Of a stretch of DNA of 64,000 bases, positions 23,059 to 56,736 are shown piece after piece. Every line of letters starts with the position of its first letter. Positions within the stretch are counted from its first letter, which is position 1. Made by a program: the position numbers and the translations under genes. The DNA is from Ruditapes philippinarum (Eukaryota), in assembly GCF_026571515.1 (NCBI RefSeq), contig NW_026865212.1, forward strand, positions 62,001 to 126,000, read 5' to 3'. Below the pieces are notes generated by a model that did not search any database, had not been told where the DNA came from, and worked only from the letters and a program-made list of their open reading frames with translations.

Positions 23059-23068
23059 ATTTTATTTC

Positions 23069-30473: not shown

Positions 30474-33017
30474 TTACATATGAGGGCATGCAATCCAATT
30501 TAGGGATGATCCGTAAATAATAGAATCAGCCCATGTCTTTACTGACAGCGTGGCGGAAGAAGTTGTTACAGCTGATACGTTTGACGCAATTCTCACATTA
30601 TGATCCGGATTCACATCCATCATCGCAAATGCAAGTGTTACAACAGGGACCTTTGTGAACGGGGGAGTAAAGTGAATAACTCGGTTTTCTGAACATTTTT
30701 GTATGGCGCATTCCATTGGGTATAAAGTTATTGACCCAGTTCGACCTGCCAAAAATATAAACAAGGTAATCATTATCGCAAGCTGTCCGTCGTTCGTGCG
30801 TAAGCAATTTCGTGACAGCTCACTAGTGGTTTCATTTCTTGTTTGATTTGAACCAAACTAACACTCAAATTTGTATTTCATCGAAAGACATTAATATAAT
30901 CTGTATAATAGCACTTAAAACCTTAAAGTTCAGAAACTGTTCAAATGTCGCTTAATATGGTTTTGATCGAGCATTTAGAAAATTCAAATTAGTCAGAATA
31001 TGGTCTTGTATTTGTTATTTTTTACCAAAATGTCCACTTTCAATTTCGTATTTAGTGTAACAGAATTAAAATATCAAATATGAACAGTAACTGTATTATT
31101 ATAGATTCTTTTTAAAAATAATAACTATCAAACTTACATCTTTCAAGTTTCTCAGCATTCAAACCAGCTTTAAGATCTGAAAGAAAGAAAAACATGACTA
31201 AGAGTCATAGCATGATTACAATTATTGCATTACCTAATGTTAAATGAAGGTTGTTCCCTGTTTTAAAGATTTTTCCCTTTGAATTTGTTTGTTGTTACTT
31301 TAAGCGAAAGACCCTGTAAAAAGAATTTTGTCAATGGGCAATACTACGTTTTATCAAAATTAAACATGTTACAAGCCAACGCCCATACACATTTGTGTTA
31401 CTTTTATACCCAATTCACCAAATTCTATTAGATGATTTATTGATAGATTTCTATTGTTTGTAGGCACAGACATAAGGACTTATTTCATTAAAAAAGTTTC
31501 TGCAGAAACTCTGGTCCGGTCATCTTAAAAATATTTACTACCTTTTTTCAGAGCCAGATAAGTTTTTTAAAAGAGCAACCACGTCTATTTTGAGCATAGA
31601 TAATACAAACCTACATGTCAAGACACATATATCGAAGTATTTTCCCCCATTTTAAGACAGATACTAGTACTCAAAAATAAATATAGATGATTTAAAATTC
31701 TAAATGAATATCCATTACAAAGCGTTTATATCTATATTTGGAGAGCTGAGTGAGATACTTGATTCAAAATATATATGGAATATTATTCTGTAGTACGAAA
31801 ATATTGAATGTGGTGTATGGATTATAGTTTAGAATTCAAGTAAAGCCCTGGAATTGATTTGTCCTATTCAGTTGTCTTGGTACTATTGACATTTGCTTGT
31901 AAATAAGGATGATTTTACTTTGGTTTCAGAAAAAATGTCAGGCTTTTATATGTATTATTTTGTTCTTGGAAATATGGATTATTGTTTGTTGGTCAGTATT
32001 GTCTCAGGTATGCGATTAAGCAAATAATTTTGGAAAGCAATCTCTGCACATAATTTTAACATCAACGATGGGTTTTATTTATTCATAAGAAGAACAATTA
32101 TTGAAGAAAATAAATTTATTTCATAATAAATAATGAAAATGCTGGAGAACTTAATAAATCATATGTTAATACATCATTTTTAGCAAAAAAAGTACATTAT
32201 ATGTAAAAAAATACAATATAATTAAAAGTTAAAGTGCTCATTAGTGTTTCATTTTTTGTATATTTTTTTGTGTCACAACTTTAGAATCTCTAGCTTACCG
32301 ACCAGAAAAATATAACTATGACTGCATTTCTATTTGGATTAACCTTGGTCATCTAAAACGCAATTTGCACGAAATAAACGGGTATCGTTAACTACTGAAC
32401 TGTAGTGTAACATTTAAAAAAAAGTACATGTGCATGACATACGTCGCAGAAGAGAACCGTTAACCTTATTAACATATGTGCACAAAGCCTGATCAATTTA
32501 ATTAAAGACTTAAAATAAATAATGTTGAAATAATGTGGATGTAGTGTCATCAAATTAAATACTTATGAGAACATAATTTACAACAAACGTGTATTTTACC
32601 TGCTCCTTATTTTGCATGTTCAGCCTTCAATTGAGCAACATCCTGATAATGTGTGACATTCAGCTGAGCAACATCCTTATAATGTGTGGCATTCAACTGA
32701 GCAACGTCCTGAGACTGTGTAGCCTTCAAGTTGGCAACTTTTTGGGAATATATAGCATCTAATTGACCCACCTCCTGATCATGTTTACCCTTCATATGAG
32801 CGATATCTTTGGCTTGGGAAGCCTTCAGTTGAGTGATATCTTTCGCATGGGAAGCCTTCAGTTGAGCAATAGTTGTATTTAGCTCCCCAATCTCAGTTCG
32901 AAGTTGATGTATGGCTTCTGCAATGGATACTGGATCATGAAGTAGAAGACGTTTATTCTCGCTGATGACTTCGCTCGATACAATTACTAAAAAGAACTGA
33001 ATGCATGAAAACTTCAT
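30474..33017 (-). pseudogene. Lectin gene L1: signal peptide, hendecad coiled coil, H-type lectin; nonsense codon at the end of exon 1
   Basis: Exons 33017-32600, 31176-31138 and 30745-30474 (phase-1 GT-AG introns). TAA at 32609-32607 where paralogues have GAA. Exon 3 is intact: F.PPF.KVP.V...MDVN...N.RI...VTTSSATL.V.TWAD..IY...LNWIAC. PolyA signal at 30445-30440. Confidence 0.85.
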
Positions 33018-33452
33018 TGTGTAACGTGGCAGCACTACGTTCCGTTGGTAAATGTTTCCTTCGTTGATTTGGTGCGCAAAGTACGATTACGAGTTTTTAG
33101 ATAAGCTGTGACATTTTAATAGTGTAAAGGTACTTTTAATTAATCACTCTTCTCTGCTATGCACATATTTGTTCATTTTTAGAAAATGACAATTATCGTG
33201 AGTGTTCATTATCAAAAACACTAAAATGTGTGGGGTACTTTTCATTTTACTACAAATGGCTCGCTTTTTATCTTTCCTAGCTTATAACTCATTAAATACA
33301 TTGTTATACATTCTAACTATACAAAAAGGGACAAAAGCGTTTTTCCTCGTTGTTAAATAAGATCATTATGTTTATGTGTTGAATTTTAGCAATATTGCAT
33401 GTTCTATCTATGTCTCATGCCTGTAATGTTTCTTACGCTCGCTTTTTTATAT

Positions 33453-34752
33453 AACAAGAGCTGTCACAGGAGATAGCGAAGCTCGACTAATAAAATACTG
33501 AACACAGTAAGGAAGACAAAACTATGAAAAATAATCAATTATGTATAAGTATGTATTAAGTTATAGTAAAAAAATAAAATAGTTAACATAAATTCCAAGA
33601 TCAAGGGGAATAATTCTAGAAATAGTCATGCTAGAGTTATGAACCGTGTCACACAACATGTGTGTAATGGTAAGAAATATATATTTGAACTTTGAAGTAG
33701 ATACCTTAAAAAGTAATGAAGTTATAAATCTGTAAATATTTCTTCAAGAGTTATGAACATTGTCACATAAAATGTAATTGATGATAAGGAATAAGTTTGT
33801 GAAGTTCGAGGTAGATACCTTTAAAACTAAAAATGTTATAGTATAAAAATAACATTTTTCTAGTAAAAGTTTATGGGGAGATAATTCTTGCAATATTGAT
33901 GCTAGATTTATGAACCTTGTCACATAACATGTGGTTAATGATAAGGTACATACATTTGAAGTATGAAGTTGATCCCTTAAGAAATAAATAAGTAACAGTA
34001 AAAAATAATATTTTTAAGGAAAATTCTAAGTTCAAGGGGAGATAAATCTGAAAATATTGGTGCTAGAGTTGTGAACCTTGCCACATAAGATGGGGATGAT
34101 GATAAGGTACATATATTTGAAGTATGAAGTTGATCCCTTAAGAAATAAAGAAGTAACAGTAAAAAATAATATTTTTTAAGGAAAATTCTAAGTTCAAGGG
34201 GAGATAAATCTGAAAATATTGGTACTTTGTCACATAACATGTGGTTAATGATAATGTACATATATTTGAAGTATGAAGTTGATCCCTTAAGAAATAAATA
34301 AGTAACAGTAAAAAATAATATTTTTTAAGAAAAATTTTAAGTTCAATTGGAGATAAATATCAAGATATTGGTGCTAGAATTATGAACCTTGTCACATAAG
34401 ATGGGGATGATGATAAGGTACATATATTTGAAGAATGAAGTTGATCCCTTAAGAAAAAAGATGTAACAGTCAAAAATAGTATTTTTTTAAGGAAAATTCT
34501 AAGTTCAAGGGGAGATGAATCTGAAAATATTGGTTCTAGAGTTATGAACCTTGTCACATAAGATGTGCTTGATGATAAGGAAAATATATTTGAAGTTTGA
34601 AGTTGAAACCTTAAGAAATGACAAAGTTATAGTGAAAAAATTTTACTGCACCTAAACTTTAATCTGAAATCTGGACGCGGACGCAGATGCCGACGCCGAC
34701 GCCGGGGCGAGTAGGGCAGCTCTCCATATTCTTCGTTTAGTCGAGCTAAAAA
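33453..34752 (-). mobile_element. Helentron/HINE-like non-autonomous element with an internal ~161-bp satellite array
   Basis: Subterminal inverted repeat GCTCGACTA (33481-33489) / TAGTCGAGC (34738-34746), a (GACGCC)n microsatellite at 34675-34703 and a terminal stem. Units recur at 33968, 34129, 34278 and 34440. Absent from the paralogous site at ~38160. Confidence 0.85.
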
Positions 34753-34915
34753 TCACTTCAAGTAAATAACAATACATGATGATTAGCATGCATTGTAAGA
34801 AACAAAATGTACACCTTAATATAAAATATAAAAATTCCAAGCCTTACAGGCCATTTGATATTTGAACTAAATAAAACAAGACACATTTATTTGCATATTT
34901 ATATATTTATTAAAT

Positions 34916-37694
34916 TTACATGTTTGGACATGCAATCCAGTTAAGGCTTGATAGGTAGATAACTGTATCAGCCCATGTATGGACGGTTAACGTTGCAGAA
35001 GACGTTGTTACAGCTGATACGCTTGACCCAATTCGAAAATTTCTATCCTTATTGACATCCATAGATGAAAAAGCGAATGTGACTACTGGAACCTTTGTAA
35101 ACGGGGGAGAAAAGTGAATAACTTGACTCTCTGAACATTGTTGCTGGGCGCATTCTTCGTGGTGGAAACCTATCGATCCTGTCCGACCTGTCAAAAATCA
35201 ATTTTATGCCAATCAATTTACTAGTATGTTTGTGTTATCTTTAGTTTTAGAGATTAGAGAGTGTTTATGTTACTAGTTTGTAATTATTGTAATCGTTGTT
35301 TGGCGCATTCCTCATGGTGGAAACTTATTGACCTAGTTCAACCTGTCCAAATATATATATAGTGGTCACGGTGAGCTTTGTGATTGCATTATATCGGTCG
35401 TCCATGCGTTAGACCGTGCGTCAGAAAGTTCCTGTCAGCTCAGTGTAGTTTCATTTTTTTGTTTGATTTGAATTAAACTAACACACAATTGGTATCATAT
35501 AAAATAAAAAAATAAAATTGAAACATCAAATTTGAACAGTGACTTATAATAAGAGATTTTACATAAGTATAATAACTATCATACTTACATCTTTCAAGTT
35601 TCTCAGCATTCAAACCAGCTTTAAGATCTGAAAAATAGCAATCACAGCATAAATACCATTTTTGAAATAGAGAGAATTCTACCAAATATAAAATGAAGGT
35701 TGTTCACTGTTTACTGTTTAACAGATTTTTTGCTTTACATTTGTTTGTTGTAACTTAAAGCAAAAGGCCCTGCCAAAGAAAAAACAAGAAAAAAAACTCT
35801 CGGACAATGGATCCGGATTTCGTAAATGTTACGATTAATCAAAAATTATTCCTGTTACAAGGCAACGCCCATACGCTAACTTTGTACTTTGGAGATAATG
35901 TGTGGTTCATATATTTTACATACTGTATGTAGAATAGAAATAAAAAATTCAAAACCCGTGCTTCTTTTAACTTATCGGAAAATGCTGATAATTGTGATAC
36001 ACAGTGTTATTATATCACCACAGTATTTTATAAATTTATCGCGTGGCAAATCTGTATATATATTTGCATCTTATTTGTCTATAATTAACGAGATGGAGTC
36101 TATATCAAATATGTTACATCGAAATACTGAATCAAATTGAGAAATATTCTATTTTGTTATAGTATTTGATATATTAAGGAATTCATTGGCATTATTTAGT
36201 TCTTGGAAATATGGATTATTGTTTGTTGATCAGTATTATCTCGGGCATATGATTAGGCAAATAATTTCGGACAGCCATCTCTTTCGCTGCACCTATAATT
36301 TTAACATCAACTATCGGGTTTTATTTATTCATAAGAAAAAAACGGTTGATTGATATCGTCCGGTACCTACCATCAAGATCAAATATTGAAGAAAATAGAT
36401 TTATTTCATAATAAAAAAGAATTTGTAGGAGAACTTAATAAATATACATACAATGTAATTAAAAGTAAATGTTCATTAGTGTTTCATTTTTTTTATCAAT
36501 ATCTTTGATGTCACAACTTTAGAATTCCTGGCTTGTACCAACCAGAAAAATATAACTATGACTGCATTTCTATTTGAATTAACCTTGTTCATCTAAAAGG
36601 GAATGTGCACAAAATAAACGGAGTAGCATTTAAAAAAGTACATGCACATTGATACGTCGCAGAAGAGAACTTTTAAAGGGATGACAAAAAAATCAAAATT
36701 ATCTTATGTACTCAAATCACACTAAAATGAAATTTGTAAAAGTCCCAGCATGAATTTCTGTATAAATTCTTTTTTGGCGGTTTGAAGCGTAAATATTTTT
36801 ATATATGTTGAACAAAATTGAGCCGCCAAGAGAATCACCGAGTAGTTTTAAAACTGGATCAAACCCTGGTAGTTACAATTACAGCTATTGTGGATATTGT
36901 ATGATTGGCACAAACCTAAATCATTCATTTGGCGTTTTCTTTAACGATTCCAGACTTCTCTGTTAAAAGTAATGTGGAATCTTAACGCTCTAACCTTACC
37001 TGCGTAGGTCAAGTTAGGAAACCACCATTTTATTCCTTATAAGCTGAAAAGTTTTGTTCCTGTGATTGCCTAGTGTACTCATTTTGAGGAAATTTGCAGA
37101 TTAATAAATGAAAAATTCAAAACGAAGAAATAAAAATTTTGCTTGTGTCTCCCTTTAACCTTATTTACATATGTGCACAAAGCATGACCAATTTAATTAA
37201 AGACTACAAGAAACTATTTTTTTAAATCATGTGGATGTAGTGTACATATGAGAACTTATATTACAACAAACTTTACCTGCTACTTCTTTTGCGTGTTCAG
37301 CTTTTAGTTGGGCAACATTCTGATAATGTGTGACATTCAACTGAGCAACATCCTGGAAATGTTTGGCATTTAATTGAGCAACATCCTTATAATGTGTGGC
37401 ATTCAACTGAGTAACGTCCTGAGACTCTGTTGCCTTCAAGTTGGCAACTTCTTGAGAATATAAAGCATCTAATTGTCCCACCTCCTGATCATGTTTAGCC
37501 TTCATTTCAGTGATATCTTTCGCATGGGAAGCCTTCAGTTGAGCTATAGTTGTATTAAGCTCCCCAATCTCAGTTCGAAGTTGATGTATGGCTTCTGCAA
37601 TGGATACTGGATCATGAAGTAGAAGACGTTTATTCTCGCTGATGACTTCGCTCGATACAATTACTAAAAAAAGCTGAATGCATGAAAACTTCAT
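34916..37694 (-). CDS. Lectin gene L2: secreted coiled-coil / H-type lectin, 242 aa, intact
   Basis: Exons 37694-37277 (418 nt), 35627-35589 (39 nt) and 35187-34916 (272 nt) join in an open frame. MKFSCIQLFLVIVSSEVIS leader, 8 eleven-residue repeats, DLKAGLNAEKLER linker and H-type lectin domain. PolyA signal at 34891-34886. Confidence 0.92.
35296..35347 (-). pseudogene. Relic 5' fragment of a lectin exon 3 inside L2 intron 2
   Basis: Minus strand ttggacag|GTTGAACTAGGTCAATAAGTTTCCACCATGAGGAATGCGCC translates as a decayed (C)*TRSISFHHEECA. Confidence 0.75.
36677..37154. mobile_element. Kolobok-like MITE inserted at TTAA in L2 intron 1
   Basis: TTAA-AGGGATGACA...TGTCTCCCT-TTAA. The paralogous L1 intron has a single TTAA at ~32460. 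A related fragment lies at ~18455-18570. Confidence 0.8.
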
Positions 37695-38371: not shown

Positions 38372-40819
38372 TTACATATTTGGACATGCAATCCAGTTAA
38401 GGCTTGATCCGTAGACAACTGAATCAGCCCATGTATTGACTGTTAACGTAGCAGAAGACGTTGTTACAGCTTTGACGATGGACCCAATCCGAAAATTTCT
38501 ATCCTTATTGACATCCATAGCTGAAAAAGCGAATGAGACTACAGGAACCTTTGTAAACGGGGGAGAAAAGTCGATAACTTGACTCTCTGAACAGTGTTGC
38601 TGGGCGCATTCTTCGTGGTGGAAACCTATCGATCCTGTCCGACCTGTCAAAAAATCAATTTTATGTCAATCAATATATTTGTGTTGTCTTTGTTTAAAGA
38701 GACAAGTATTTAAACCAGGGTGTTTATTTCAGTTTTTATTTATGGTAATCGTAGTTTTAATCTGTCTTTTTGATAGCAAAGTGCAAGGCTTCAAGCAGAT
38801 TAAGTTTGGTCAATAGTCATGGATGAGTAAAATAACGTTTAGGATTTATGACCACAAACATGATATTTCTTTAATCACATGGCTTCATATCAATATGCAA
38901 ACATTTAAAGAAATATACACGTTTTATGTGCTTTATCAAAATAAAAAAAATTTGAAAGTTGAGATCGATAGAAATGAAAGTTGAAAATCGATGACTCGGT
39001 TGTAGTAAGTCATGTGCCAACATAACATCATGTTTAGCTGTTTAAATATATATTATGATTAAATTTGATATTTGAAATAAAACTGATAATTACTTTACAT
39101 TCTCTTTTGAAATGTAAAAAAAAACATCTTTTGAATACACTCAGAGAAAAAAGGTTATGTTTTAAACTCTACACATTATAGGTAATCACAGTATGATTGC
39201 GTAGTGTCATTAAAATAATGGCAGTTTTTATACAAAAAAAACAAGCTAATTTGACAAGCAATAGAAAATAAAGCTGCCCAATCAAAATAAATACATTCAC
39301 TTCAAATAATGACCCAGAATCCGTTAAGAAAATATGATGTGATAGAGCAATGTTTAGAGAAATCTAAGCCTATAGTTACGAAATTATTTAGGATTATTAA
39401 CATATTGAATTCTATCTTGAAGCGCCAATAATTGTGCGTCATCTGGTTAATGATAAACTATGTTAATGTTTGGGTAAAAAGGTTCTATCGCAGAAATTTA
39501 TTGAAATCAAGTCAATCTTCTTGAATATGTCTACCTCAGGTGTCCCTCTATACATTTTACAGGCACAAACAGCCATCTGAGTAGAACCACTGACATTCCA
39601 TAAGCTAGCTGGATAGCTTTCTTACATCAAAGAATCCGAAGACGCTAGTGCGACTCAAAACTACAGCGGTTTGAAGTCAACGACCTTAACCACTCGCCTA
39701 CGGACGCCCATGAAGCCAATACTGTTGAGAATGATCAAGCACACACAGATCTGCTGCGTTCTTTGATTAAAATTGGACAGTTGGATGTTATCCATGACAA
39801 AGAAAAATTAAGCGATGATCCAAGTATTCTTTCCCGTGACTACAGATTTATTAAAACCTTATCTGCAGCTTCCGCTTATAAATTGGTTCACCATTTAACT
39901 CGCCATGTATTCCCGTAATTGGTTTCGTAAAAAATAAACTTAAAGATAACCAGTGGGTATATGTTTCAAAAGAATTTACACAAACGTAGTAATCATCATA
40001 CTTACATCTTTCAAGTTTCTCAGCATTTAGACCAGCTTTAAGATCTGAAAGAAAAAAAAACATAACAAGATCTATAGGGTCAAAGTATATTAACATTGTT
40101 GAATACTAAATGCAAAATTGTGGTTAAGCTCAAGTGAGATTCCCTGTAAAGATGTGTTTGAAGACCTTTTATTTGTTGCGTCTAAAGCTATAGGTTCACA
40201 CATTTTCTAACCTTACAACTCAATCCCAAATAGAGAGGAAATTATAAGTATTCTAAAGGTATCAGAACTCCTGGACATATATTGACGAAAAAAAAACTGT
40301 GCACTTGGGTTTAACTGTTGTTTTTTCAGGCTAGTCTTGTAAAAACATTTAAATGGCACCATAATCTAGATATTCATCCGCCAACATGATGCAGTGTATT
40401 GTGTCATAATAAAAAATAAACGCCGCTATTTGTTTTTTTTTTCACGATTCCAGTTAATATGCCGGTATATAACTAAAGGAACATTTTTTTCATGTTTATG
40501 TGGATACAATTTAAACCAAATCGTGCATTCATAAACCTGTCCCCCTTACTAAATGAGTTTTACCTGCTACTTCTTTTGCGTGTTCCGCTTTCAGTTGAGC
40601 AACATCACGAGAATGTGTGGCATTCAAATGAGCAACATCCTGGGAGTGAGAAACCATCATTTGAGCAATAGTTGTATTCAGCTCTTCAATCTTTGTTCCC
40701 AGTTGATGTAAGGCATTAGCAATAGATTCTGGATCGTGGAGAAGTAGACGTTTGCTTTCTAGGCTGCAAGATTCATGCAATAAAATTGCCAAAAGGAACT
40801 GAATAAGTAAAGATTCCAT
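38372..40819 (-). CDS. Lectin gene L3: secreted coiled-coil / H-type lectin, 188 aa, intact
   Basis: Exons 40819-40564 (256 nt), 40044-40006 (39 nt) and 38643-38372 (272 nt). MESLLIQFLLAILLHESCS leader, KRLLLHDP, 3 eleven-residue repeats and H-type lectin domain. Confidence 0.92.
39575..39709 (-). mobile_element. tRNA-derived SINE relic
   Basis: Minus strand GGGCGTCCGTAGGCGAGTGGTTAAGGTCGTTGACTTCAAA head. Body shared with 45245-45438 and 49150-49286. Confidence 0.7.
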
Positions 40820-40882
40820 AGTGCACTGACCTATAACTTAACATATGTTTGTGAACTTCGTAATATTTTAGTTTAATTGTTC

Positions 40883-40926
40883 TTATCTAGATAAAATTTG
40901 ACATTATATTAAATCACCTTTTATAA
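40883..40926 (-). promoter_or_regulatory. Candidate core promoter of L3 (TATA-like box and palindromic double GATA site)
   Basis: TATAAAAG on the minus strand ~100 bp upstream of the ATG, and palindrome TTATCTAGATAA at 40883-40894. The same sequence lies upstream of L5, but within a recent duplication. Confidence 0.3.
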
Positions 40927-43616: not shown

Positions 43617-45961
43617 TCACATATTTGGACATGCAATCCAATTTAGTGTTGATTGGTAATTTTCAGAGTCGAGCCATGTTCCGACTGTTAAATTAGCAGA
43701 AGACGTTGTCACAGATGAAACCTATGAGTATATCCGAGTGTTAAGATTTTTGTTTACGTCAATCCTAGAAAAAGCAATTGCTATCACAGGAACCTTTGAA
43801 AATGAAGGAGAAAAATGAATAATCCGACTTTCCGTACAATTATGAGTTGCACATAATTCATGACCAAAATCAACTGACCCTGTTCGACCTGAAATAAAAA
43901 TGTAAGCACTTATTTATGTTTTATTAAACAAATACTTGAAGCCTTCTATCGTTTATTTTCCAACTCCGATTCCATAAGCTACATTATATAGCTGTTTAAA
44001 ATGTACCACATATTATTCATGTATAAATTGTGTAAAAGTAATGTTATAAGTTTGATCTATAACTAGATGTGGTGTATTGTTGTGTGCTTTAAAATTCATA
44101 ATTAGTAAAGATCATTGGCAATATTCTCATCAAACATATTTGGCCCGTCATTAAAAGCAAGAAATCCACGGGATTGGATTTTCTCTCGATGTTTTTATTT
44201 GACAAATACTTGAAGTCCAGGCTTTTTGGTGGCTTTGGCACATACATCAAACGGATATTTAAATCTCTCTAAAACACTAAAATAATGGATAATTTATTTG
44301 CTGCAATTATCCGGCGATTAAATAAATGTGTAATATGTATTAAAGACGTGTTGATGGCGAACCAATTATAGTTTTGCCCAAGCAGTGACTTTGCTAAAAC
44401 AAGAAATAAGAACAGCATTTAACATATGCGACCATTTTGACAAAAATCTAGTATCCATATTCCATTAATCACGATAAGGTTGTCCCTGTACCGTCATTAA
44501 TTCTTACGTACTAACGTACCAAATTGAGGCCAAAAAAATAAGATTACAATATCACCAAGGAAGGGCGGCATTCAATGAAACACATCCCCCCAAAAAAACA
44601 ACTAGAACTCCTTATAAATTCATATATGCATGAACAAAAGATTTCTCTTTTTCCATGATTTAAATAATCATAACAGATCATAATTACTGTTTGCCACTTT
44701 AAGAACGTTGCATGTTTGTGAATTCACAAATAAGATCATTTGAAGCCTTAACTATAACCAATAACACTGCACATTGTGCATCTGTACCTTAATGGCATAG
44801 TAACGCTTTCATTCAGGCAGAACTAGAGTCTAAAATTGTAATAAAGGAAACGTATGATACGTAACAGTGAATGAAAACAAGCAAAAATCTATATAAAGAT
44901 AACCCGTCAAATAACATGATGGATCCTTAACGTGCCCAGTTGGAGGTCTTTTGTCGTCCATTTTGTTATAGTGTTTGCTATCTCTATTCTGATATGCTTT
45001 GGGCTGGCGTTATACGGGTGGAAATATCAATTCTTGTTAACTGTATACATTTCCGTCCAGGAACGGAGATAAATAGTGGTTATGTTAAATAATTTACCAA
45101 TAGTTAATTTTTAAAATACCGGACCAGCAATCGTACTCACATCTTTGAAGTTTTTCAGCATTCAATCCAGCTCGAAGATCTGAAAAATACAATAACATGA
45201 CTTTTTCTAAGTTCAAGATATTAAGGTAACTAATTTTTATTTCATTGGTTGGGTTTTACGCCGCACCAACACATATTGAAGACATCAGGGCACTTAGGTA
45301 GAACCACCGAAGTTCCGGGAGCTAGCTGGATAGCTTCATAACATGAAATAATCCAAAGTCCCCGGTGTGGTCCGAACCCACAGTAGTGATGGCAAGTGGT
45401 TTTAAGTCTACGACCTTAATCACTCGGTCACGGATGCCAGAAATCCTTACTAAATAAATAAAAAAGACAAACAATATACAATAAAGAATAAGTATGAATT
45501 GCATCTTCAAATTGCAATATTGCCATACATAATATACATCAAAGATTATTTTTTATAACACACTTGGAACCTGTGCACAATGAAAGTTGTATTTATTATA
45601 TATTTTGATTAAATCAAGAGATAAATGTTATCCAATTACAAATATATACACTACCTGCTACTTCTTTTGCATGTTCACCCTTTAACTGAGCAAATGTGGC
45701 ATTTAATTGAGCAACGTCCCGAGACTGTGTAGCGTTCAAGTTGGCAACTTCTTGGGAATATATAGCATCCAACTGACCGATCTCCTGAGCATGTTTGGCT
45801 TTCATGTCAGCAATAGTTGAATTTAAATCCCCAATCTCAGTTCGAAGTTGAAATATGGCTTCTGCAATGGATACCGGATCATGAAGTAGAAGACGTTTAT
45901 TCTCGCTGATGACTTCGCTCGATACAATTACTAAAAGAAGCTGAATGCATAAAAACTTCAT
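43617..45961 (-). pseudogene. Lectin gene L4: divergent H-type lectin head with an in-frame TAG
   Basis: Exons 45961-45655, 45179-45141 and 43888-43617. Exon 3 reads CRTGSVDFGHELCATHNCTESRIIHFSPSFSKVPVIAIAFSRIDVNKNLNTRIYS*VSSVTTSSANLTVGTWLDSENYQSTLNWIACPNM. TAG at 43724-43722. Exon 3 is missed by the ORF track. Confidence 0.88.
45245..45438 (-). mobile_element. tRNA-derived SINE in L4 intron 1
   Basis: Head GGCATCCGTGACCGAGTGATTAAGG (A box) ... GGTTCGGACC (B box), followed by a non-tRNA body and an AACC-type tail. Confidence 0.8.
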
Positions 45962-46591
45962 TGTGTAACGTGGCAGTACTACGATCCGTTAGTAAATGTT
46001 TCTTTCGTTGCTTTGGTGCGCAAAATATGATTACGAATATTTAGATAAGACGTGGTATTTAAATAGTTTGTTCCAATTTTGTTAAAGGTACTTGTAGTAA
46101 ACCACTCTTCATCAGCCAATGTATTGACTGTTAACATAGCAGAAGACGTTGTTACAGCTGATACCCTTGACGTAATCCGAATATTATGACCTGCATGCAC
46201 ATCCATCATCGCAAATGCGAATGTAACTACAGGAACCTTTGTGAACGGAGGATTGAAGTGTATGACTTGACTCTCTGAACATTGTTGCTGGGCGCATTTT
46301 TCGTGGTGGAAACCTATCGATCCTGTCCGACCTGTTAAAATCAATTTTATGCCGATCAATATATCTGTGTTGTCTTTGTTTTAAGAGACAAGTATTTAAA
46401 CTAGGGACTGTTTATTTTAGTTTGTATTTATGGTAATCGTAGTTTTTGTCTGTCATTTTGGTAGTAAAGAGCAAGGCTTCAAGCAGATTAAGTTTGGTCA
46501 ATAGTCATGGATGAGTAAAATAACGTTTAGGGCTATTCGACCACGAACATGATATTTCTTTAATATCAATATGGAAATATTTAAAGAAATA

Positions 46592-46990: not shown

Positions 46991-47221
46991 CACGTTTAAT
47001 GTGCTTTATCAAAAAAGTTTGTTTATTTAAAGTTGGGATCGATAGAAATGAAAGTTGAAAATCGATGACTCGGTTTTAGTAAGCCATGTGCCAACATAAC
47101 ATCATATTTAGCTATTTTAATATATATTATGCTTAAAATTGATATTTGAAACAAAACTGATAATTACTTTACAGTCTCTTTTGAAAGGTGAAAAATATCT
47201 AGAAAATATGATATGTTTTAA

Positions 47222-47940
47222 CATGCTTAAAGTCGATGTCGAAGGAAATAAGACATATAATAAAAGTAATTGGGCTTATCAAATTAAAATTATACTTGAT
47301 AAATGCGGACTTTTGTATATTTGGCAAAACCAATATAGCATGTTAATTGACTATAATATTATTGAACGACGCATATTATATATTTATTATCAAAGTTGGT
47401 ATTGTTCTATCAATAATTCTAGTCGTCTAGATACATACAGTTCTATAAAATATAAATTTGAATGTGAAAGTTATCTTAATTATATTAACGACAAAAGATT
47501 TCGAGTTGCGCTTACAAAATTTCGCACATCATCTCACGACTTGTTTATTGAAAAGGGAAGATATACAAACGTACCTAGATTGGAAAGAATATGCAATAAT
47601 TGTTCTTCGAGACAAATTGAAAACGAATTTCACTTTTTGTTTACATGCTCACAATATGCTGACCTTCGCAAAAATATCAGAAATTGCAGAAATTTACTAA
47701 TTTATTATTTTCTGAATCTAAAATAATTGTAAGAGATCTTTCTAAATATTTATATTATGCAAATTTGATTAGAAAATAGTTTTACAGAACCTCAAACACG
47801 TCATAATTATGAATTCATATGTTTTAAATTGTATTTTTGTGCTCCTTGAAAAATCCATGTCTTCTGCCTATAGTTATGTTGTATGTGCTATAAACATATA
47901 TTGTATGTTTAATGCAATAAACTTATTTGAGTTGAGTTGA
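47222..47940 (+). mobile_element. 5'-truncated LINE 3' end
   Basis: ORF with FRTSSHDLFIEKGRY...RICNNC...ENEFHFLFTC, then AATAAA and a (TTGAG)3 tail. TSD GTTTTAA at 47215-47221 and 47941-47947. Empty site at ~39160. Confidence 0.9.
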
Positions 47941-49149: not shown

Positions 49150-49286
49150 CATCTGAGTAGAACCACTGACGTTCCGTAAGCTAGCTGGATAGCTTTCTCA
49201 TATCAAAGAATCCGAAGACGCTATCGCGACTCAAAACTACAGCGGTTTGAAGTCAACGACCTTAACCTCTCGCCTACGGACGCCCA
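49150..49286 (-). mobile_element. tRNA-derived SINE relic (duplicated with 39575-39709)
   Basis: Same sequence and position within the segmental duplication. Confidence 0.7.
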
Positions 49287-51442
49287 TGAAGCGAATACTG
49301 TTGAGAATGATCAAGCACACACAGATCTGCTGCGTTCTTTGATTAAAATTGGACAGTTGGATGTTATCAATGACAAAGAAAAATTAAGCGATGATCCAAG
49401 TATTCTTTCCCGTGACTACAGATTTATTAAAACCTTATCTGCAGCTTCCGCTTATAAATTGGTTCACCATTTAACTCACCATGTATTCCCGTAATTGGTT
49501 TCGTAAAAAATAGACTTAAAGATAACCAGTGGGTATATGTTTCAAAAGAATTTACACTTACATTTAGTAATTATCATACTTACATCTTTCAAGTTTCTCA
49601 GCATTTAAACCAGCTTTAAGATCTGAAAGAAAAAAACATAACAAGATCTATAGGGTCAAAGTATAATAAACATTGTTGAATTCTAAATGCAAAATTGTGG
49701 TTAAGCTCAAGTGAGATTCCCTTATTGAACACCTTTTATTTATTGCGCCTAAAGCTAGGTTCACACATTTTCTAACCTTACAACTCAATCCCAAATAGAG
49801 AGGAAATTATAAGTATTCTAAAGGTATCAGCTGGAGGCAATGAAATATCACGCCAAGAGAACTCCTGGACATATACTGACGCAAAAAACTGTGCACTTGG
49901 TTTTAACTGTTGTTTTTTCAGGCTAGTCTTGTAAAAACATTTAAATGGTACCATAATCCAGTTAATATACCGGTATATAACTAATGGAACCTTTTTCTGT
50001 TTATATGGATAAAGTTTAAATCAAAGCGTGCATTTATAAACCTGTTCAACTTAAACGAATTTTACCTGCTACTTCTTTTGCGTGTTCTGCTTTCAGTTGA
50101 GCAACATCACGAGAATGTGTGGCATTCAAATGAGCAACATCCTGTGAGTGAGAAACCATCATTTGAGCTATAGTTGTATTCAGCTCTTCAATCTTTGTTC
50201 CCAGTTTATATAAGGCATCGGCAATAGATTCTGGATCGTGAAGAAGAAGACGTTTGCTTTCTAGGCTGCAAGATTCATGCAATAAAATTGCCAAAAGCAA
50301 CTGAATTAGTAAAGATTCCATTGTGCACTGACCTATAACTTAACATATGTTTGTGAACTTCGTAATATTTTAGTTTAACTGTTCTTATCTAGATAAAATT
50401 TGACATTATATTAAATCACCTTTTATAAAGACGGTAACCTTTCTTTATAAATGTTTAAGAATTTAAAACATCTAGAACATGTGTGTTTATTGGTAGAACT
50501 TCAGAGGTTATACAAGTCAAGTTATGACGATAAGAGAGTCTGTTTTGTGCTATATGTCGTGATGATAGGAGTCGATAGGATGACAATATCTACCAATGAC
50601 GTTAGATGAGCCTGCTTCTAGAGTGCCCATTCTCCAACGCTCACAGCAGGCATAAACATTGCAGCATAGACTGCATGAAATCATCTGTTGTAATTCAAAA
50701 TTAGCAAATCCTGCTTTTCATGTAAAATTAGTTTATGTTGACGTCTTATTAAAGACTGATCATTACTGTTGTACAAAACTAATGCATTAGTATTTTTTCA
50801 TGCCATAACTTTGATAAAGTGCGTGTCTTTTATCAGTCACTCTCAGCGTTATCAGACACCTCATCGAAACATAGTGAAATAAAATGAAGAGATCGGAATA
50901 TTTTTACCCTTTTATCTAGTTTGAAAGTATTTAACTGACAAACTTTGAATCGAATAGATTTCTTTTTAATATAATTGTCTCAAGATTACATTTTACTTAA
51001 AACATTTTGGACTCTTTCTTAGAGATATTTCTTAGAGATATGGCACATTACTGCACGCGGCATGAAGTTGAGAGGTTCTTGACAGGTTTTTGTTTTCATG
51101 AATTTGAAATCTAAAGAAAGAAACGCTTATTAAAATTAAACATATGATAAATGAATACAAACAAGTGTCTGATATAAAAAAAAATTTAGACTTGGCAAGG
51201 CCTCTTTTTGTCTTACTCCATTAGACACTAGCATGGTATTCTCTATTCATTCATCGTCTTACATTTCAAACATATAGAAGACAAATCACCTTTATAAAGA
51301 CAAATAAACTAGGACACACAATGTTTGATAACAGGTGAAAGCACCGAAATGACGATAAACTCTGCGGTCATGCGGTCTTATCTATTTTTCATAGACTAAG
51401 TGCTTCTTATAGACATTTATGTCATTTTCAAACGACACAACT

Positions 51443-52374: not shown

Positions 52375-53404
52375 TGGCATGAAGGAACTTGAAATAATTG
52401 CGGGATGTTAATATTTCATTTAATGTATATCAAGACCTGCAGCTTAAGTGGAAAGTTTTAGATTACACCCATATGTGTATTTCAGAAGTAAAGCTGTACA
52501 TAATACACTTAAGAAAACGGAGTATACTTTATATATATACTCCTGGTTTAGACCCCGTGGTGTTTCAAGGATAAAGCCCCAAAAATACGCTTTCAATTGA
52601 TTTCAAAGTATATTTCTTAACAACCATTTGCATATCTTTCCTTTTTTAATTGAACCATCTAGTCTTTGTAAGAAATTTAAAGTGTATAATTTAAGTCTTT
52701 TTGGGTCTCAGTGAAGTTCCTGTAATCAACCAAAGATATGTTGTTGCTAAAAGTTCCTATATACTCGAGATTTGTCGGTGCATAAAGAATCTTGTTTTGC
52801 TACTGTTAATTGTCCAACCAACAATACTAAGCAGTACATAGCTTATTATGCAGAGTTAAATTGGAATCACATTGGATCAATCTGGCATTATAAATAATCA
52901 TATCAGTGTTGTGTTGAGTTAGGTTTGAGATCTGTTGATTTAAATTAACATTATGTCGGGTCAAATCTGCAGAAATGGGACTCCACATTATGTAGAATCA
53001 GAATGGCGTTATGTTGGGCCAATGAGACATTATTTAGATACAGATTGGCGTTTTACTGGGTCAATAGGACATTATGTACTTAATGGAACTGTAGGTCATA
53101 TATTTACTTTGAAATTGTGTAATTGATTTTTAATCACAATAAGAATACGAAATTATATTGTGCATTTGTAGATTATAAAAAAACTTTCGTTTCTGTAAAA
53201 AAAAACTTTTTTACGGAAGAAACTTTTAATGGTAAAATGCTAAGAGTAATTTAATTGTATTTACGACAAAGCTATATCATGTGTAAAAAGCACTCAGGGT
53301 TTATCAACTTATTTTACAAGTGCAACGTACAGGTGTCCGTCAAGGTGAAAATCTATCACCTATTTTCTTTCTTCCTGAATGATCTTGTGGAGCATATTTC
53401 ATAT

Positions 53405-53600
53405 ATGTACAAGAAAAGCATTGATGCAAAGCATCAAAGGGCGTCCAAGCAAGAAATGCAGCAAGTGAAGATGAACTAGTAGACATATGATGACAAGATA
53501 TTCTTATAAACTACCAGAATTGTATATCACTTATGAATGAGCGGACGAAAGACATTGTACATTATGAACTTTGATTGGCATGCTACAGATTAGAATATTA
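53405..53600. repeat. ~200-bp local repeat present three times
   Basis: Reverse complement of 42782-43001 and a direct copy of 58505-58715 (TGCAAAGCATCAAA-GGC-TCCAAGCAAGAAATGCA). Confidence 0.85.
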
Positions 53601-53624
53601 CTTGTTATTTCTTTATGATCGTGG

Positions 53625-54436
53625 TTATTAATACCAACGGATATAGAGAATAATAGGTTGGTGCCGTGGATGGAGAAAGTTTATCTGGCGAGGCGGAGGA
53701 ATTTATTGGGTGAGCCGAAGGCTGCACTTGTTCTTAATGAGATCTATCATCCTATTATTCTATTTATCCTGTCACCGTTTTTTTTTTAAAGAATTTTATT
53801 AAGCAAACTACCTTTAATCACACTATCGAAAATGTTTCTATATACACAAAGAAGGCCCGAAGCGTGCATTATTCTACAACAATGCACTCGCCGTTCTTAT
53901 TATCTCCCTGTGTATTTTCACATTGAAGGCGCCATTTTGTTTGAAAAATGTGATAAATAAAAACAATTTTTTGTCGAATTTTGTTGTGAAAACTATCTAG
54001 AATGAAAGAAAATGGTCTAACTAAGAAAATGAATTGGAACACCAATATCTTTTATTCAGTCGTAAACGCTGTACAGACGTTTAAAGTATTGTTTACGTGA
54101 CGTCACAATGTAGCGCCAAACAGCACGTGCAAAACAATCAAATCAAATACGCTATTTTAATGTCGCAAACGAGTTAAGTTATACATTTATTTCACTTTTA
54201 TAATTTTTATTTCGCTTGAAAAATTATAGAGTGAAATAAAATAAACAAACAAAGTTTTATCAACGTTTCCAAAATTCGTTATTCTACACACAGAAGATTT
54301 AACGACAGTTTTTTTCATACCACTGGAACGGCCTGTAAAGAAGTCCGGCAAACCACGTGATCAAGTGCCGTAGATCAGTAAAAATATACGGCACCTTGTT
54401 ATCGGGCCGAAATTGATACAAGTGACAGGATAAATA
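53625..54436. mobile_element. Hairpin-type non-autonomous element with a disrupted hairpin
   Basis: AGAATAATAGG / CCTATTATTCT arms, and TATTTATCCTGTCAC (53761) / GTGACAGGATAAATA (54422) inverted repeats. Confidence 0.6.
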
Positions 54437-55689
54437 CATGTATACAATCATTTATAATCCATATGTGTAACGCATGATCAACACGTACCACACTCGTGTA
54501 ATTGTCCCTTATTATATTATCGCTATTAGCGAAGATCCCCTCTTAAGGTATCTGTTCACACTTAGTAAAAATATGCCACTGGTTATATTACCATGTTGAT
54601 CATGTTGAGCATAATTGTTTATTATACAATAATTGTAATGTCTATTAATTCTAATAAAAAATAATACAAATTCTATGAATATTGTTTTCTTTTCTTTTTT
54701 TTGTGTTTTATGTGCTATTTTAATACTGAGTTTTTATGTTTACTACTTTTTTTATAAAAATTGTAAAATAAATTTTAAGAATTCAATTGTCATATTGACC
54801 GACGAGTATAAGACAAAACTTAACTGGAAAAAGTCAGTAAATTAGGGTTAATCTTTCAATATATAATATTGGTTATTCTTAAACCATGTACATGTACATT
54901 TGTATTTTCTTTATCATTTTTTAAATTATCAATCAATTGAATAATTCATAAAATATAATTTGTAACTTTGAATAATTGCTCGGCATCTGTACCAAACACG
55001 AATAACAAATTAAATAAAAATGTTTCAAAGTTGATCATGTTAATTAATACCATAAAAATGTACCTTTTTTCTCAATTATTGTACATATTTATTGTTTTTA
55101 TCTCATATAGATAAAATGAAACATGCTATTGTTATTGTTGTTGTTTTGTTGTTTTTTTCGAATTGTAACGATATCAAACATCTACTCCAAAACCGGGAGA
55201 GACCGGACAATAAACGTGTAGTACTATTCGCCGGTCACTAGTAAATCCCGGTCAAAATAGACCGGGAGAGACCGGAAATTACCGATAGGAGTGATAAATA
55301 GATATATCTATAAATAGACTTTCGGAATATTTAGGTCATCAACTGATCATTCTAGGATACATGTTCAACAATAACATACCATGATAACCCACTGTGTACT
55401 ACAAAATGATAAATAAAAAAACCCGAAGAGCGCGATTTATTGACGGATAGGAAAAGGTTATTTTATTTTTTGAAAATGTTTGCATTGCGAAATTCTCCAG
55501 TTCGCTATTCATTGTAACATATCGCGACATTTTGTTCTTAATTAATAATCAAGCACCCTCATACCGATCGGAATGATCGGCTTTTATTATGACCGACTAA
55601 AAGGCTCGAGAAGTTGCTGTCGCCCTTTCACAAAATCTGATTTCATTCCATAAACAGGGCGCGGACGCCAATAATGGTTTAAATTTACT

Positions 55690-56578
55690 AATAACTAGAA
55701 CTCCGCGAGTCGGATGTGTCGCCTTGTGAACAATAAAGTTTAGGAGAATGGCCAGGACAAAAATGAAATTTGAAAATCAACAAAGGGCAATAACTCAAAA
55801 AATAAGAAATGCAGAGCAGCAGTTTCTGTGCACTGCACTTCTTATCAATAAGATAATAAGTTTCAAGTCTAAAGCTTTTATAATTTATGAGAAATGGCCT
55901 GGACAAAAATAAAGTATGAAAATTAACAAAGGGCAATAACTCAAAAAATCAAAAAAGCAGAGTACCAGTTCTTGGGCACTGCACTTCTTTTTTAAGAGAT
56001 CTATCATCCTATGAAGTTTCATGTCCATTGCTTTTATACTTTAGGAGAAATGGCCTGGACAAAAATAAAGTATGAAAATTAACAAAGGGCAATAACTCAA
56101 AAAATAATAAGTGCAGAGTACCAGTTCCTGGGCACTGCACTTCTTCTTAATGAGATCTATCATCCTATGAAGTTTCAAGTCCATAGCTTTTATACTTTAG
56201 GAGAAATGGCCCGGACAAAAATAAAGTATGAAAATTAGCAAAGGGCAATAAGTCAAAAAATAAGAAATGCAGAGTACCAGTTCTTGTGCACTGCACTTCT
56301 TCTTAATGAGATCTATCATCCTATAAAGTTTCAAGTCCATAGCTTTCATACTTTAGGAGAAATGGCCTGGACAAAAATAAAGTATGAAAATTAACAAAGG
56401 ACAATAACTCAAAAAATAAGAAATGCAGAGTACCAGTTCTTGTGTACTGCACTTGTTCTTAATGAGATCTATCATCCTATGAAGTTTCAAGTCCATAGAT
56501 TATATACTTTAGGAGGAATGGTCCGGACAAAAAATAAGTATGAAAATTAACAAGGGCAATAACTCAAAAAATAAGAAT
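55690..56578 (-). mobile_element. Truncated Helentron/HINE-like element with a 156-bp satellite array (~5.5 units)
   Basis: The GGGCAATAACTC motif or a close variant recurs at 55785, 55931, 56087, 56243, 56399 and 56554. AACTAGAA terminus. The array stops abruptly at a lectin exon fragment. Confidence 0.85.
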
Positions 56579-56579
56579 T

Positions 56580-56736
56580 CCAATTGACCCACATCCTGAG
56601 CATGTTTGGCTTTCATGTCAGCAATAGTTGAATTTAACTCCCCAATCTCAGTTCGAAGTTGATGTATGGCTTCTGCAATGGATACTGGATCATGAAGTAG
56701 AAGACGTTTGTTTTCAAGGCTGACGACTTCACTCGA
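56580..56736 (-). pseudogene. Orphan lectin exon-1 fragment (L6)
   Basis: Minus strand translates SSEVVSLENKRLLLHDPVSIAEAIHQLRTEIGELNSTIADMKAKHAQDVGQL. No start codon and no splice donor. Confidence 0.88.

What the first reader, a model, noticed from the sequence alone, without database searches (positions are those of the whole stretch)
30474..56736. Tandem array of secreted stalk-and-head H-type lectins: a candidate collectin-like recognition system
Seen: five three-exon genes and one orphan exon on one strand, with a constant layout of leader plus stalk exon, 39-nt neck exon and 272-nt lectin exon, all with phase-1 introns. Known: H-type lectin domains (Helix pomatia agglutinin, discoidin C-terminus, coral SLL-2) trimerise and bind Gal/GalNAc, and the characterised snail and coral proteins lack a long stalk. 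Inference: these are trimeric rod-plus-head proteins analogous to collectins, ficolins and bivalve C1qDC proteins, but with a coiled-coil stalk and an H-type head. They evolve by rapid birth and death, with 2 of 6 intact. I know of no characterised family with this architecture. Immune recognition or mucus particle sorting are the obvious candidate roles.
Basis: partly seen in the sequence, partly recalled or inferred. Interest (0 to 1): 0.85.

Follow-up and report, generated by a model that had tools for sequence, protein, structure and literature searches.

The report
Clam stalk-and-head H-type lectin cluster
A Manila clam gene cluster encodes secreted proteins with a snail-agglutinin-type sugar-binding head on a predicted three-stranded helical stalk of variable length; I found no description of this design for this lectin family, though its logic matches other bivalve lectins, and its function is untested.

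Summary
On the minus strand lie five three-exon units and one stalk fragment. Each unit has a leader plus stalk exon, a 39-nt neck exon and a 272-nt head exon, all with phase-1 introns. Only L2 and L3 are intact. The head is a true H-type lectin by Pfam score (56-60 bits against a cut-off of 24) and by fold match to SLL-2 and Helix agglutinins. The residues I recall as the snail agglutinin's sugar contacts are invariant in six heads.

The stalk is an array of 11-residue repeats, 33 nt at the DNA level, with about one to eight such repeats among the paralogues. A three-copy model scored 0.83 against 0.01 for the best control and showed an in-register parallel coiled coil with histidines in its core.

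The genome is Ruditapes philippinarum, and RefSeq lists these genes as uncharacterised proteins. Two more intact copies lie just outside the window. All 14 H-lectin matches in the genome belong to this cluster or to a second, longer stalked subfamily.

RefSeq second isoforms join intact exons of broken units to neighbouring genes. Expression and sugar binding could not be tested. This is a new variant of a known kind, of moderate interest.

The parts
37277..37694 (-). L2 exon 1: signal peptide, conserved N-terminal motif and stalk, 11 hendecads in register (residues 30-150, the last from the neck exon), 33-nt DNA period; intact
   Evidence: equals the N-terminus of RefSeq P0001
35589..35627 (-). 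L2 exon 2: 39-nt neck encoding the last hendecad of the stalk
34916..35187 (-). L2 exon 3: 272-nt H-type lectin head with stop codon; AATAAA signals 7 and 27 nt after the stop
   Evidence: Pfam H_lectin 58.2 bits, E 9e-16
40564..40819 (-). L3 exon 1: type-B leader and short stalk of three histidine-bearing hendecads; intact
   Evidence: P0006
40006..40044 (-). L3 exon 2: neck
38372..38643 (-). L3 exon 3: H-type lectin head; intact
   Evidence: Pfam 60.5 bits
32600..33017 (-). L1 exon 1: L2-type stalk with a TAA at codon 137 (32609-32607)
31138..31176 (-). L1 exon 2: neck, identical to the L2 neck
30474..30745 (-). L1 exon 3: intact head, used as the last exon of RefSeq isoform X2 of the L2 gene (P0166)
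   Evidence: Pfam 56.2 bits
45655..45961 (-). L4 exon 1: type-A stalk; intact
   Evidence: P0002
45141..45179 (-). L4 exon 2: neck with 5 mismatches to the L2 neck
43617..43888 (-). L4 exon 3: head with an in-frame TAG
50066..50321 (-). L5 exon 1: type-B stalk, intact, used as the first exon of RefSeq isoform X2 of the L3 gene (P0167)
49584..49622 (-). L5 exon 2: neck
46115..46331 (-). L5 exon 3: head truncated at its 3' end (break near 46115) and fused to an L2-type upstream region
   Evidence: Pfam 37 bits over profile positions 2-53
56584..56736 (-). L6: orphan stalk fragment without start codon or splice donor
6072..6215 (-).
   Evidence: tblastn E 4e-4 to 5e-4, with a stop in frame

Best explanation
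This is a venerid-clam tandem cluster of genes for secreted, homotrimeric, stalked H-type lectins. A cleavable leader directs secretion (inferred). The mature chain starts with a conserved N-terminal motif beginning KRLLLHD. It then forms a parallel, in-register, three-stranded alpha-helical coiled coil, with heptads first and 11-residue hendecads after. In the hendecads the core positions are Val, Leu and His. The separately encoded 13-residue neck is the last hendecad and is almost invariant among the paralogues. It delivers the three chains into a trimeric H-type lectin head. The head's three binding pockets lie at the subunit interfaces and most likely take Gal/GalNAc-type sugars. Paralogues differ in two ways: in stalk length, through gain and loss of 33-nt repeats, and in the loops around an invariant Asn-x-Arg / Trp / Tyr pocket. 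The cluster therefore offers heads of different fine specificity at different reaches. Shown here are the gene structures, the domain identity, the fold, the repeat structure, the mosaic history and purifying selection. Predicted only are the trimer and the coiled coil. Inferred are secretion, sugar binding and a role in recognising foreign or food-particle glycans.
For: Intact heads score 56-60 bits against the Pfam H_lectin cut-off of 24. The best sequence matches among solved structures are SLL-2 (E 1.2e-10), which shares the same four cysteines in the alignment, and Helix agglutinins. AlphaFold2 with alignment A1 gave mean pLDDT 89.2, with one long helix over residues 30-93 followed by six strands. 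Foldseek matched the head to SLL-2, HPA, HAA and discoidins with target-normalised TM 0.78-0.81 for the small lectins. Residues aligned to HPA Asn61, Arg63, Trp83 and Tyr89 are invariant in six heads, and variable columns cluster beside them. The trimer test on P0006 residues 21-188 in three copies scored 0.83, with a best control of 0.01. The mark was reached by 21 of 30 proteins solved as pairs of one chain and by 0 of 23 solved as single chains. Runs agree in at least 89% of contacts and the partner's pLDDT is at least 84. Contacts are same-residue pairs (40-40, 44-44, 47-47) and run through I33, L37, L40, I44, L47, I51, M54, H58, V62, L65, H69, V73, L76, H80, V84, L87 and L91, plus head-to-head contacts. 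The hendecad register has His exactly 11 residues apart and a 33-nt DNA period. dN/dS is 0.10-0.52. Leader, stalk and neck are conserved in Mercenaria (P0155). RefSeq models match my exon models exactly.
Against: The trimer score may partly come from the model's memory of solved HPA, SLL-2 and discoidin trimers. The test was calibrated on two copies rather than three, and mostly on microbial proteins. The residue aligned to HPA His84 is Ala in L1, L2 and L3. I recall His84 as contacting the N-acetyl group, so the specificity may differ from GalNAc. H-type heads can be repurposed for peptide binding, as in CofB, which does not bind GalNAc (PMC6048534). A single-headed trimer has no obvious way to cross-link particles, and type-A mature chains have no spare cysteine for higher-order assembly. 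No signal-peptide predictor was available. The N-x-T sequons in the hendecads lie next to core positions, which would clash with glycosylation if they are used.
Confidence: 0.75

Rival explanations
1. The locus works as an exon-cassette system rather than as independent genes. Transcripts starting at one unit's stalk exon splice to the neck or head exons of downstream units. Intact exons of 'broken' units (the L1 head, the L5 stalk) would therefore still be used, and stalk-head combinations would be made at the RNA level.
For: RefSeq isoform X2 of LOC132728180 (P0166) is L2 exon 1 plus neck plus the L1 head. Isoform X2 of LOC132728181 (P0167) is L5 exon 1 plus neck plus the L3 head, skipping all of L4. 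All introns are phase 1 and the neck is 39 nt, so every combination stays in frame. The truncated L5 head has lost its stop codon and poly(A) signal, which would favour read-through. The L1 head keeps a good acceptor, an open frame and a poly(A) signal although L1's own exon 1 carries a stop.
Against: The neck exons are 95-100% identical among L1, L2, L3 and L5, and the L1 and L2 necks are identical. Short reads across the neck therefore cannot be assigned to a unit, and automatic models may have chained exons wrongly to avoid the stop codons. I saw no reads. The L5-to-L3 model needs an intron of roughly 10 kb (9.5-11 kb, depending on which neck exon is used) that skips a whole gene.
Confidence: 0.3
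2. The 11-residue repeats are not a coiled coil. Instead they form an amphipathic, LEA-, apolipoprotein- or synuclein-type helix that binds lipid or membrane surfaces or protects against drying, and the lectin head serves as a targeting module.
For: Sub-threshold Pfam LEA_4 hits on the stalk exons: 30.2 and 27.5 bits in the clam and 23.9 bits in Mercenaria. Eleven-residue periodicity is typical of such helices (my own knowledge).
Against: All LEA_4 scores are far below the cut-off of 51.1 bits. The three-copy model places Val, Leu and His in an in-register core with low expected error. The head it feeds into is natively trimeric in every solved relative. The N-terminal third of the stalk is heptad-like.
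Confidence: 0.07
3. The head no longer binds sugar and instead docks a peptide or protein partner at the subunit interface, as in the ETEC minor pilin CofB.
For: There is the CofB precedent (PMC6048534). The His84-equivalent position varies (A/A/A/L/H/S), and the loops around the pocket are the most variable columns.
Against: The residues aligned to HPA Asn61, Arg63, Trp83 and Tyr89 are invariant in six heads. CofB covers its pocket with a long inserted loop, and no such insertion is seen here, where the head length equals that of SLL-2 and HPA.
Confidence: 0.12
4. The cluster is a decaying, unexpressed remnant, and the 'intact' copies are merely not yet broken.
For: Three of the five units in the window, one fragment and one relic are disabled. 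No expression data were obtained here.
Against: dN/dS is 0.10-0.52 between heads at dS up to saturation. Splice sites, the neck exon and the pocket residues are all conserved. Leader, stalk and neck are conserved in another venerid genus. There are four intact genes on the contig. RNA-labelled runs hold part of the L2-L3 words.
Confidence: 0.05

Closest known systems
SLL-2, galactose-binding lectin of the octocoral Sinularia lochmodes (PDB 3wmp, 3wmq, 5x4a)
   Same: It is the best sequence match (E 1.2e-10) and among the best fold matches (E 5e-8, TM 0.78, 34% identity). In the alignment it shares the four-cysteine pattern, including a Cys just before the head and one in the C-terminal W-I-A-C, as well as the Asn-x-Arg and Trp pocket residues.
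   Different: The SLL-2 chain is 94 residues and is head only. The clam proteins add a 75- to 130-residue helical stalk and a separately encoded neck.
Helix pomatia and Helix aspersa agglutinins (HPA 2ccv/2ce6/2cgy; HAA 4q56)
   Same: They share the H_lectin domain and fold (TM 0.81). The residues aligned to HPA Asn61, Arg63, Trp83 and Tyr89 are conserved. The binding site is predicted to lie between subunits of a trimer.
   Different: The snail lectins are about 100 residues with no stalk. They form hexamers of two disulphide-linked trimers (PMC4795696 and my own knowledge). The His84 equivalent is Ala in L1-L3, Leu in the broken L4, Ser in L8, and His only in L7.
Collectins and ficolins (MBL, SP-D)
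   Same: The working logic is the same: a secreted trimer with a rod, a short alpha-helical neck and a globular sugar-binding head. From my own knowledge of collectin genes, the neck there also has a small exon of its own.
   Different: The clam proteins have no collagen Gly-X-Y repeats, no C-type or fibrinogen-like domain and no N-terminal cysteine-rich region in type-A chains. The similarity is analogy, not homology.
Bivalve C1q-domain and fibrinogen-related lectins with N-terminal coiled coils
   Same: The architecture class is the same: signal peptide, coiled coil and a head. PMC8878817 describes it as common in bivalves, with the coiled coil taking the place that collagen holds in vertebrate proteins and possibly allowing oligomerisation. 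These genes also occur in tandem, fast-turnover families.
   Different: The head fold differs (H-type). The same paper states that H-type lectins are not expanded in Mollusca and describes no coiled-coil form. This family is small, with 14 domain matches in the genome.
Phage tailspikes, R-type pyocin fibres and the ETEC minor pilin CofB
   Same: All carry a trimeric H-lectin-like head at the tip of a trimeric fibre (Foldseek ranks 11-22; ESM Atlas structure rows with collagen or tail-fibre proteins; PMC6048534).
   Different: These are prokaryotic or viral proteins. The shaft is beta-structured, collagen-like or a pilus rather than an alpha-helical hendecad coil. Sequence similarity is negligible (9-19%).
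Second stalked H-lectin subfamily of the same clam (P0158-P0163) and the oyster protein P0119 (Saccostrea echinata XP_061178999)
   Same: They have a signal peptide, a coiled coil and a C-terminal H_lectin head, with a Cys just before the head and a W-M-A-C ending.
   Different: In subfamily 2 the last long coiled coil and the head lie in one exon. The stalk is 250-350 residues of heptad type and includes a Thr/Ser/Pro-rich linker, with no histidine ladder and no 39-nt neck exon. Identity to L2 is 22-27% for the four long stalk-plus-head matches.

Membership tests
H-type lectin family (Pfam PF09458; HPA, SLL-2, discoidin C-terminal domain) | Sequence match to the H_lectin profile above the curated cut-off | tested here: met
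   56.2, 58.2 and 60.5 bits for the L1, L2 and L3 heads against a cut-off of 24; 37 bits for the truncated L5 head
H-type lectin family | Six-stranded beta-sandwich fold superposable on solved members | tested here: met
   AlphaFold2 model with pLDDT 89.2; Foldseek matches to SLL-2, HPA and HAA with TM 0.78-0.81 and probability 1.00
H-type lectin family | Homotrimer with the binding pocket at subunit interfaces | tested here: met
   In silico only. Three-copy model scored 0.83 against a best control of 0.01. Residues 145-154 of one chain touch residue 176 and residues 179-183 of the next. The pass may come from memory of solved trimers.
H-type lectin family | Conserved sugar-contact residues (HPA Asn61, Arg63, Trp83, Tyr89 and His84; roles recalled from Sanchez et al. 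2006, not re-read here) | tested here: inconclusive
   Four of the five are invariant in six heads. The His84 equivalent is A/A/A/L/H/S.
H-type lectin family | Binding of GalNAc/Gal-terminated glycans | not testable with these tools
   Needs glycan arrays or a haemagglutination-inhibition assay.
Collectins | C-type lectin carbohydrate-recognition domain | tested here: not met
   No Lectin_C hit on any exon. The only related hit is a sub-threshold match to the hepatic lectin N-terminal coiled coil, at 11-13 bits against a cut-off of 28.3.
Collectins | Collagen-like Gly-X-Y stalk | tested here: not met
   The stalk is alpha-helical with an 11-residue period. No Collagen Pfam hit.
Bivalve coiled-coil C1qDC / FReD lectins | C1q or fibrinogen C-terminal head | tested here: not met
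   H_lectin is the only Pfam domain above its cut-off.
LEA_4 (late embryogenesis abundant) 11-mer repeat proteins | Profile match above the curated cut-off | tested here: not met
   24-30 bits against a cut-off of 51.1.

The most novel reading that the evidence does not exclude
The array may be a combinatorial exon-cassette locus. All introns are phase 1 and the neck exon is nearly invariant, so a stalk exon of any unit can be spliced to the neck and head exons of downstream units, including units whose own partner exon is broken. Two RefSeq second isoforms already predict this. Mixed trimers could then add further combinations of stalk length and head specificity. A second layer is possible: the histidine layers in the hendecad core could make trimer assembly depend on pH or metal ions. 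Because the pockets lie between subunits, ligand binding would then depend on them too.
Probability: 0.25. Interest if true: 0.75.

Novelty: new variant of a known kind. Interest (0 to 1): 0.5.

Why it matters
H-type lectins are valued as glycan probes; HPA, for example, detects Tn and GalNAc epitopes. In the sources I read they are known only as small stalkless proteins or as domains in discoidins, and Gerdol et al. (2017) stated that none had been characterised in a bivalve. This cluster shows that a commercially important clam builds its whole H-lectin repertoire as stalked, predicted-trimeric proteins. That converges on the rod-neck-head plan of collectins, ficolins and bivalve C1q or fibrinogen-related lectins, but with a third kind of head and an unusual histidine-cored hendecad rod. 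It offers a natural series of heads with an invariant pocket and variable rims, mounted on rods of about one to eight histidine-bearing repeats. Such a series suits tests of how reach and valency tune glycan recognition, and could supply new GalNAc/Gal reagents. If the chimeric isoforms are real, it would also be a small, tractable example of diversity made by splicing between tandem genes in an invertebrate recognition family.

Tried and rejected
That used the only call, so nothing was laid. Those places were not sent to any search tool afterwards, and later scripts stayed at or above 38300 for L3.
3. Single-sequence AlphaFold2 of P0001 folded the stalk but not the head, where pLDDT was below 50 from residue 166. 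It was replaced by a run with alignment A1.
4. Word-indexed homologue searches found only Ruditapes proteins and one Mercenaria protein. They cannot show absence elsewhere.
5. The exhaustive HMMER search with the head exon was dominated by fungal and algal proteins with three tandem H-lectin domains, which outscore single-domain animal relatives. The spread of the stalked form among molluscs therefore could not be mapped.
6. The ESM Atlas shows no large cluster with a stalk. This says little, because small clusters are not searched.
7. LEA_4 membership was rejected, as all scores were below the cut-off.
8. One script that held typed head sequences came back unrun. It was redone from the files.
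Exons were searched singly by reference. The full-length proteins used later (P0001, P0006 and others) are database records returned.
10. A paper search for the HPA contact residues found nothing usable. Their roles are quoted from memory.

Full report
**What is there**

The window is Ruditapes philippinarum contig C13699, positions 62001-126000. All elements of the finding lie on the minus strand.

A tblastn of the window against itself finds five head exons and six stalk exons between 30474 and 56736. A fuzzy search with the L2 neck finds five 39-nt exons, each between a polypyrimidine-AG acceptor and a GT donor, with 0-5 mismatches.

Exon 1 runs from an ATG to a G|GT donor and measures 418, 418, 256, 307 and 256 nt in L1 to L5. 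Each length is 1 modulo 3, so both introns are phase 1. The head exon is 272 nt in L1 to L4.

**State of each unit**

- **L2** (37694-34916, 242 aa) and **L3** (40819-38372, 188 aa) are intact.
- **L1** has a TAA at codon 137, three codons before the exon 1 donor. Its neck and head are intact.
- **L4** has a TAG inside the head.
- **L5**: the head follows its closest relative down to about 46115. From about 46120 to 45962 the DNA is 95-100% identical to the region upstream of the L2 start codon. A deletion or unequal exchange therefore removed the head's last ~50 nt, its stop codon and its poly(A) signal.
- **L6** (56736-56584) is a stalk fragment without a start codon or donor.
- A decayed head relic lies at 6072-6215.
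- Outside the window, the same contig carries two more intact genes (P0003, 169 aa; P0005, 188 aa).

**The head**

I searched the spliced models exon by exon, by reference, and joined nothing myself. The full-length proteins used later are the RefSeq records that one search returned, and they equal my exon models residue for residue.

- The heads of L1, L2 and L3 score 56-60 bits against Pfam H_lectin, whose cut-off is 24.
- Among solved structures, the best sequence match is the octocoral lectin SLL-2 (E 1.2e-10), which shares the same four cysteines in the alignment. The Helix agglutinins follow.
- With a 73-sequence alignment, AlphaFold2 gives pLDDT 89.2.
- Foldseek returns SLL-2, HPA, HAA and the discoidins, then phage tailspikes and R-pyocin fibres.
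- Residues aligned to HPA Asn61, Arg63, Trp83 and Tyr89 are invariant in six heads. I recall these as the sugar contacts from Sanchez et al. 2006 and did not re-read the paper.
- The His84 equivalent is Ala, Ala, Ala, Leu, His and Ser across the six heads.
- The columns with three or more residue types cluster right beside the invariant residues, at 105-115, 145-154 and 168-177 in P0006 numbering.

**The stalk**

- Written in rows of eleven, L2 residues 30-150 fall into eleven in-register hendecads, the last one being the neck exon.
- Histidines sit at positions 57, 68, 101, 112, 123 and 134, exact multiples of eleven apart.
- The DNA shows a 33-nt tandem period in the exon 1 sequences of L1 and L2.
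- L3 and P0005 have three histidine-bearing hendecads, P0003 has one or two, and L4 has about five with a seven-residue step.
- Both AlphaFold2 runs give one uninterrupted helix.
My analysis agrees with it.

**The trimer**

I folded three copies of P0006 residues 21-188. The tool did not use my alignment.

- The score was 0.83, against a best control of 0.01.
- The mark was reached by 21 of 30 proteins solved as pairs of one chain and by 0 of 23 solved as single chains.
- The runs agree in at least 89% of their contacts, and the partner's pLDDT is at least 84.
- The tool warns that its calibration used two copies and mostly microbial proteins, and that a pass may come from memory where a like complex is solved, as it is for the head.
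- Contacts are same-residue pairs, so the coil is parallel and in register.
- Contacts follow 3-4 spacing up to residue 61 and 4-4-3 spacing after it. The core is Ile/Leu/Met, then Val, Leu and His (H58, H69, H80).
- Residues 145-154 of one head, which include the Asn and Arg, touch residue 176 and residues 179-183 of the next head, as expected for an interface pocket.

**Evolution**

- Between heads, dN/dS is 0.10-0.52. dS runs from 0.14 (L2-L3) and 0.29 (L4-L7, L5-L8) up to saturation. The family therefore combines old lineages under purifying selection with a few young events.
- The broken copies do not yet show relaxed ratios. Their lesions are thus recent, or may be segregating null alleles.
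- The units are mosaics. In upstream DNA, exon 1 and intron 1, L1 pairs with L2 (81-97%) and L3 pairs with L5 (94-98%). In the head exon and the 70 nt after it, L2 pairs with L3 (93% and 90%), while L1 is only 74% like L2. This agrees with note s1-808231.
- The neck is the best-conserved piece, and the L1 and L2 necks are identical.
- The Mercenaria mercenaria protein P0155 has the same leader, N-terminal motif, histidine hendecads and neck. Its RefSeq model then runs into the intron, so its head is simply not modelled.

**Repertoire**

The genome gives 14 H_lectin matches.

- Seven are on this contig.
- The other seven belong to a second subfamily (P0158-P0163). It has a signal peptide, a first coiled coil, a Thr/Ser/Pro-rich linker, a long heptad coiled coil and a head. 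The last long coil and the head lie in one exon.
- Every H-lectin match found in this clam thus belongs to one of two stalk-bearing subfamilies, though several matches are fragments or broken copies.
- An oyster protein, P0119 from Saccostrea echinata, has the same plan.

**An unexpected point**

RefSeq isoform X2 of the L2 gene (P0166) is L2 exon 1 plus neck plus the L1 head. Isoform X2 of the L3 gene (P0167) is L5 exon 1 plus neck plus the L3 head, skipping L4.

Phase-1 introns and an in-frame neck make any such join legal, and the L5 head has lost its terminator. However, the necks are 95-100% identical, so short reads cannot tell the units apart. The models may be artefacts that avoid the stop codons. 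I could not test this.

**Literature**

- PMC5549309 (2017) states that no H-type lectin had been characterised in bivalves.
- PMC8878817 (2022) calls the family poorly characterised and not expanded in Mollusca. It describes coiled-coil stalks for bivalve C1q and fibrinogen-related lectins, but not for H-type ones.
- PMC4795696 describes slug H-type lectins as small, with a predicted hexameric arrangement like the Helix agglutinin's.
- Bivalve papers mention the domain only by name.
- PMC6048534 shows an H-type head at a pilus tip that binds a peptide rather than GalNAc. This is a caution against assuming sugar binding.
- I found no description of a stalked H-type lectin.

**Limits**

- Expression therefore rests only on two indirect points. 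The second is the existence of the RefSeq models.
- Secretion is inferred from a 12- to 14-residue hydrophobic leader with small residues at positions -3 and -1.

**Verdict**

The structural reading is supported in silico. Function is untested. This is a new variant of a known kind, of moderate interest.

Noticed in passing
window 30474-30745, 50066-50321 and RefSeq proteins P0166, P0167: RefSeq second isoforms join L2 exon 1 to the L1 head, and L5 exon 1 to the L3 head across the whole of L4. This is either real splicing between tandem genes or an artefact of the near-identical 39-nt neck exons.
   Followed up: partly
window 6072-6215 (minus strand): A decayed H-lectin head fragment with a stop in frame lies 24 kb beyond L1. 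The array once extended further.
   Followed up: partly
P0001 residues 22-52 and equivalents in P0006, P0005, P0003, P0002, P0155 and P0004: The first residues after the leader, starting with a Lys-Arg pair and then LLLHD, are almost invariant across both leader types and in Mercenaria. They are better conserved than the leaders themselves. This could be a convertase site or a docking motif at the far end of the stalk.
   Followed up: no
P0001 His57, 68, 101, 112, 123, 134; P0006 His58, 69, 80; P0155 His57, 68, 79, 90: A histidine sits at the same hendecad position in nearly every repeat and lies in the core of the predicted trimer. It is conserved between two clam genera. Three-histidine layers suggest sensitivity to pH or metal ions.
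   Followed up: partly
window 33724-34641: A satellite with a 162/311-nt period (about six copies, 81-93% matches) lies between L1 and L2.
   Followed up: no
window 18099-18437 (+), and a similar stretch near 644-1003: An exon of an O-methyltransferase (Pfam Methyltransf_3, E 2.8e-19) is present. A second, similar stretch near 644-1003 suggests a duplicated neighbouring gene.
   Followed up: partly
window 20639-23578 (minus strand): A LINE-type retrotransposon with endonuclease (Exo_endo_phos) and reverse transcriptase (RVT_1) ORFs. A further ORF with no Pfam hit sits in L5 intron 2 at 47139-47726; I read it as LINE-tail-like, but no search shows that.
   Followed up: partly
L004 2804-3346, L005 2780-3372, L006 900-1319, L008 22-729: A tandem repeat lies next to the subfamily-2 H-lectin genes at all four of these loci and reads as long open frames of a recurring ~20-residue unit. 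It may be a satellite that travels with the gene duplicates.
   Followed up: no
P0162 compared with P0161 (contig C5716): Two RefSeq isoforms of one subfamily-2 gene differ by a run of extra 7-residue Thr/Ser/Pro-rich repeats in the linker. The mucin-like linker length varies.
   Followed up: no
P0155 (Mercenaria mercenaria XP_053380082): This RefSeq model reads through the neck donor into the intron and so lacks a head. The Mercenaria orthologue is probably mis-modelled.
   Followed up: no
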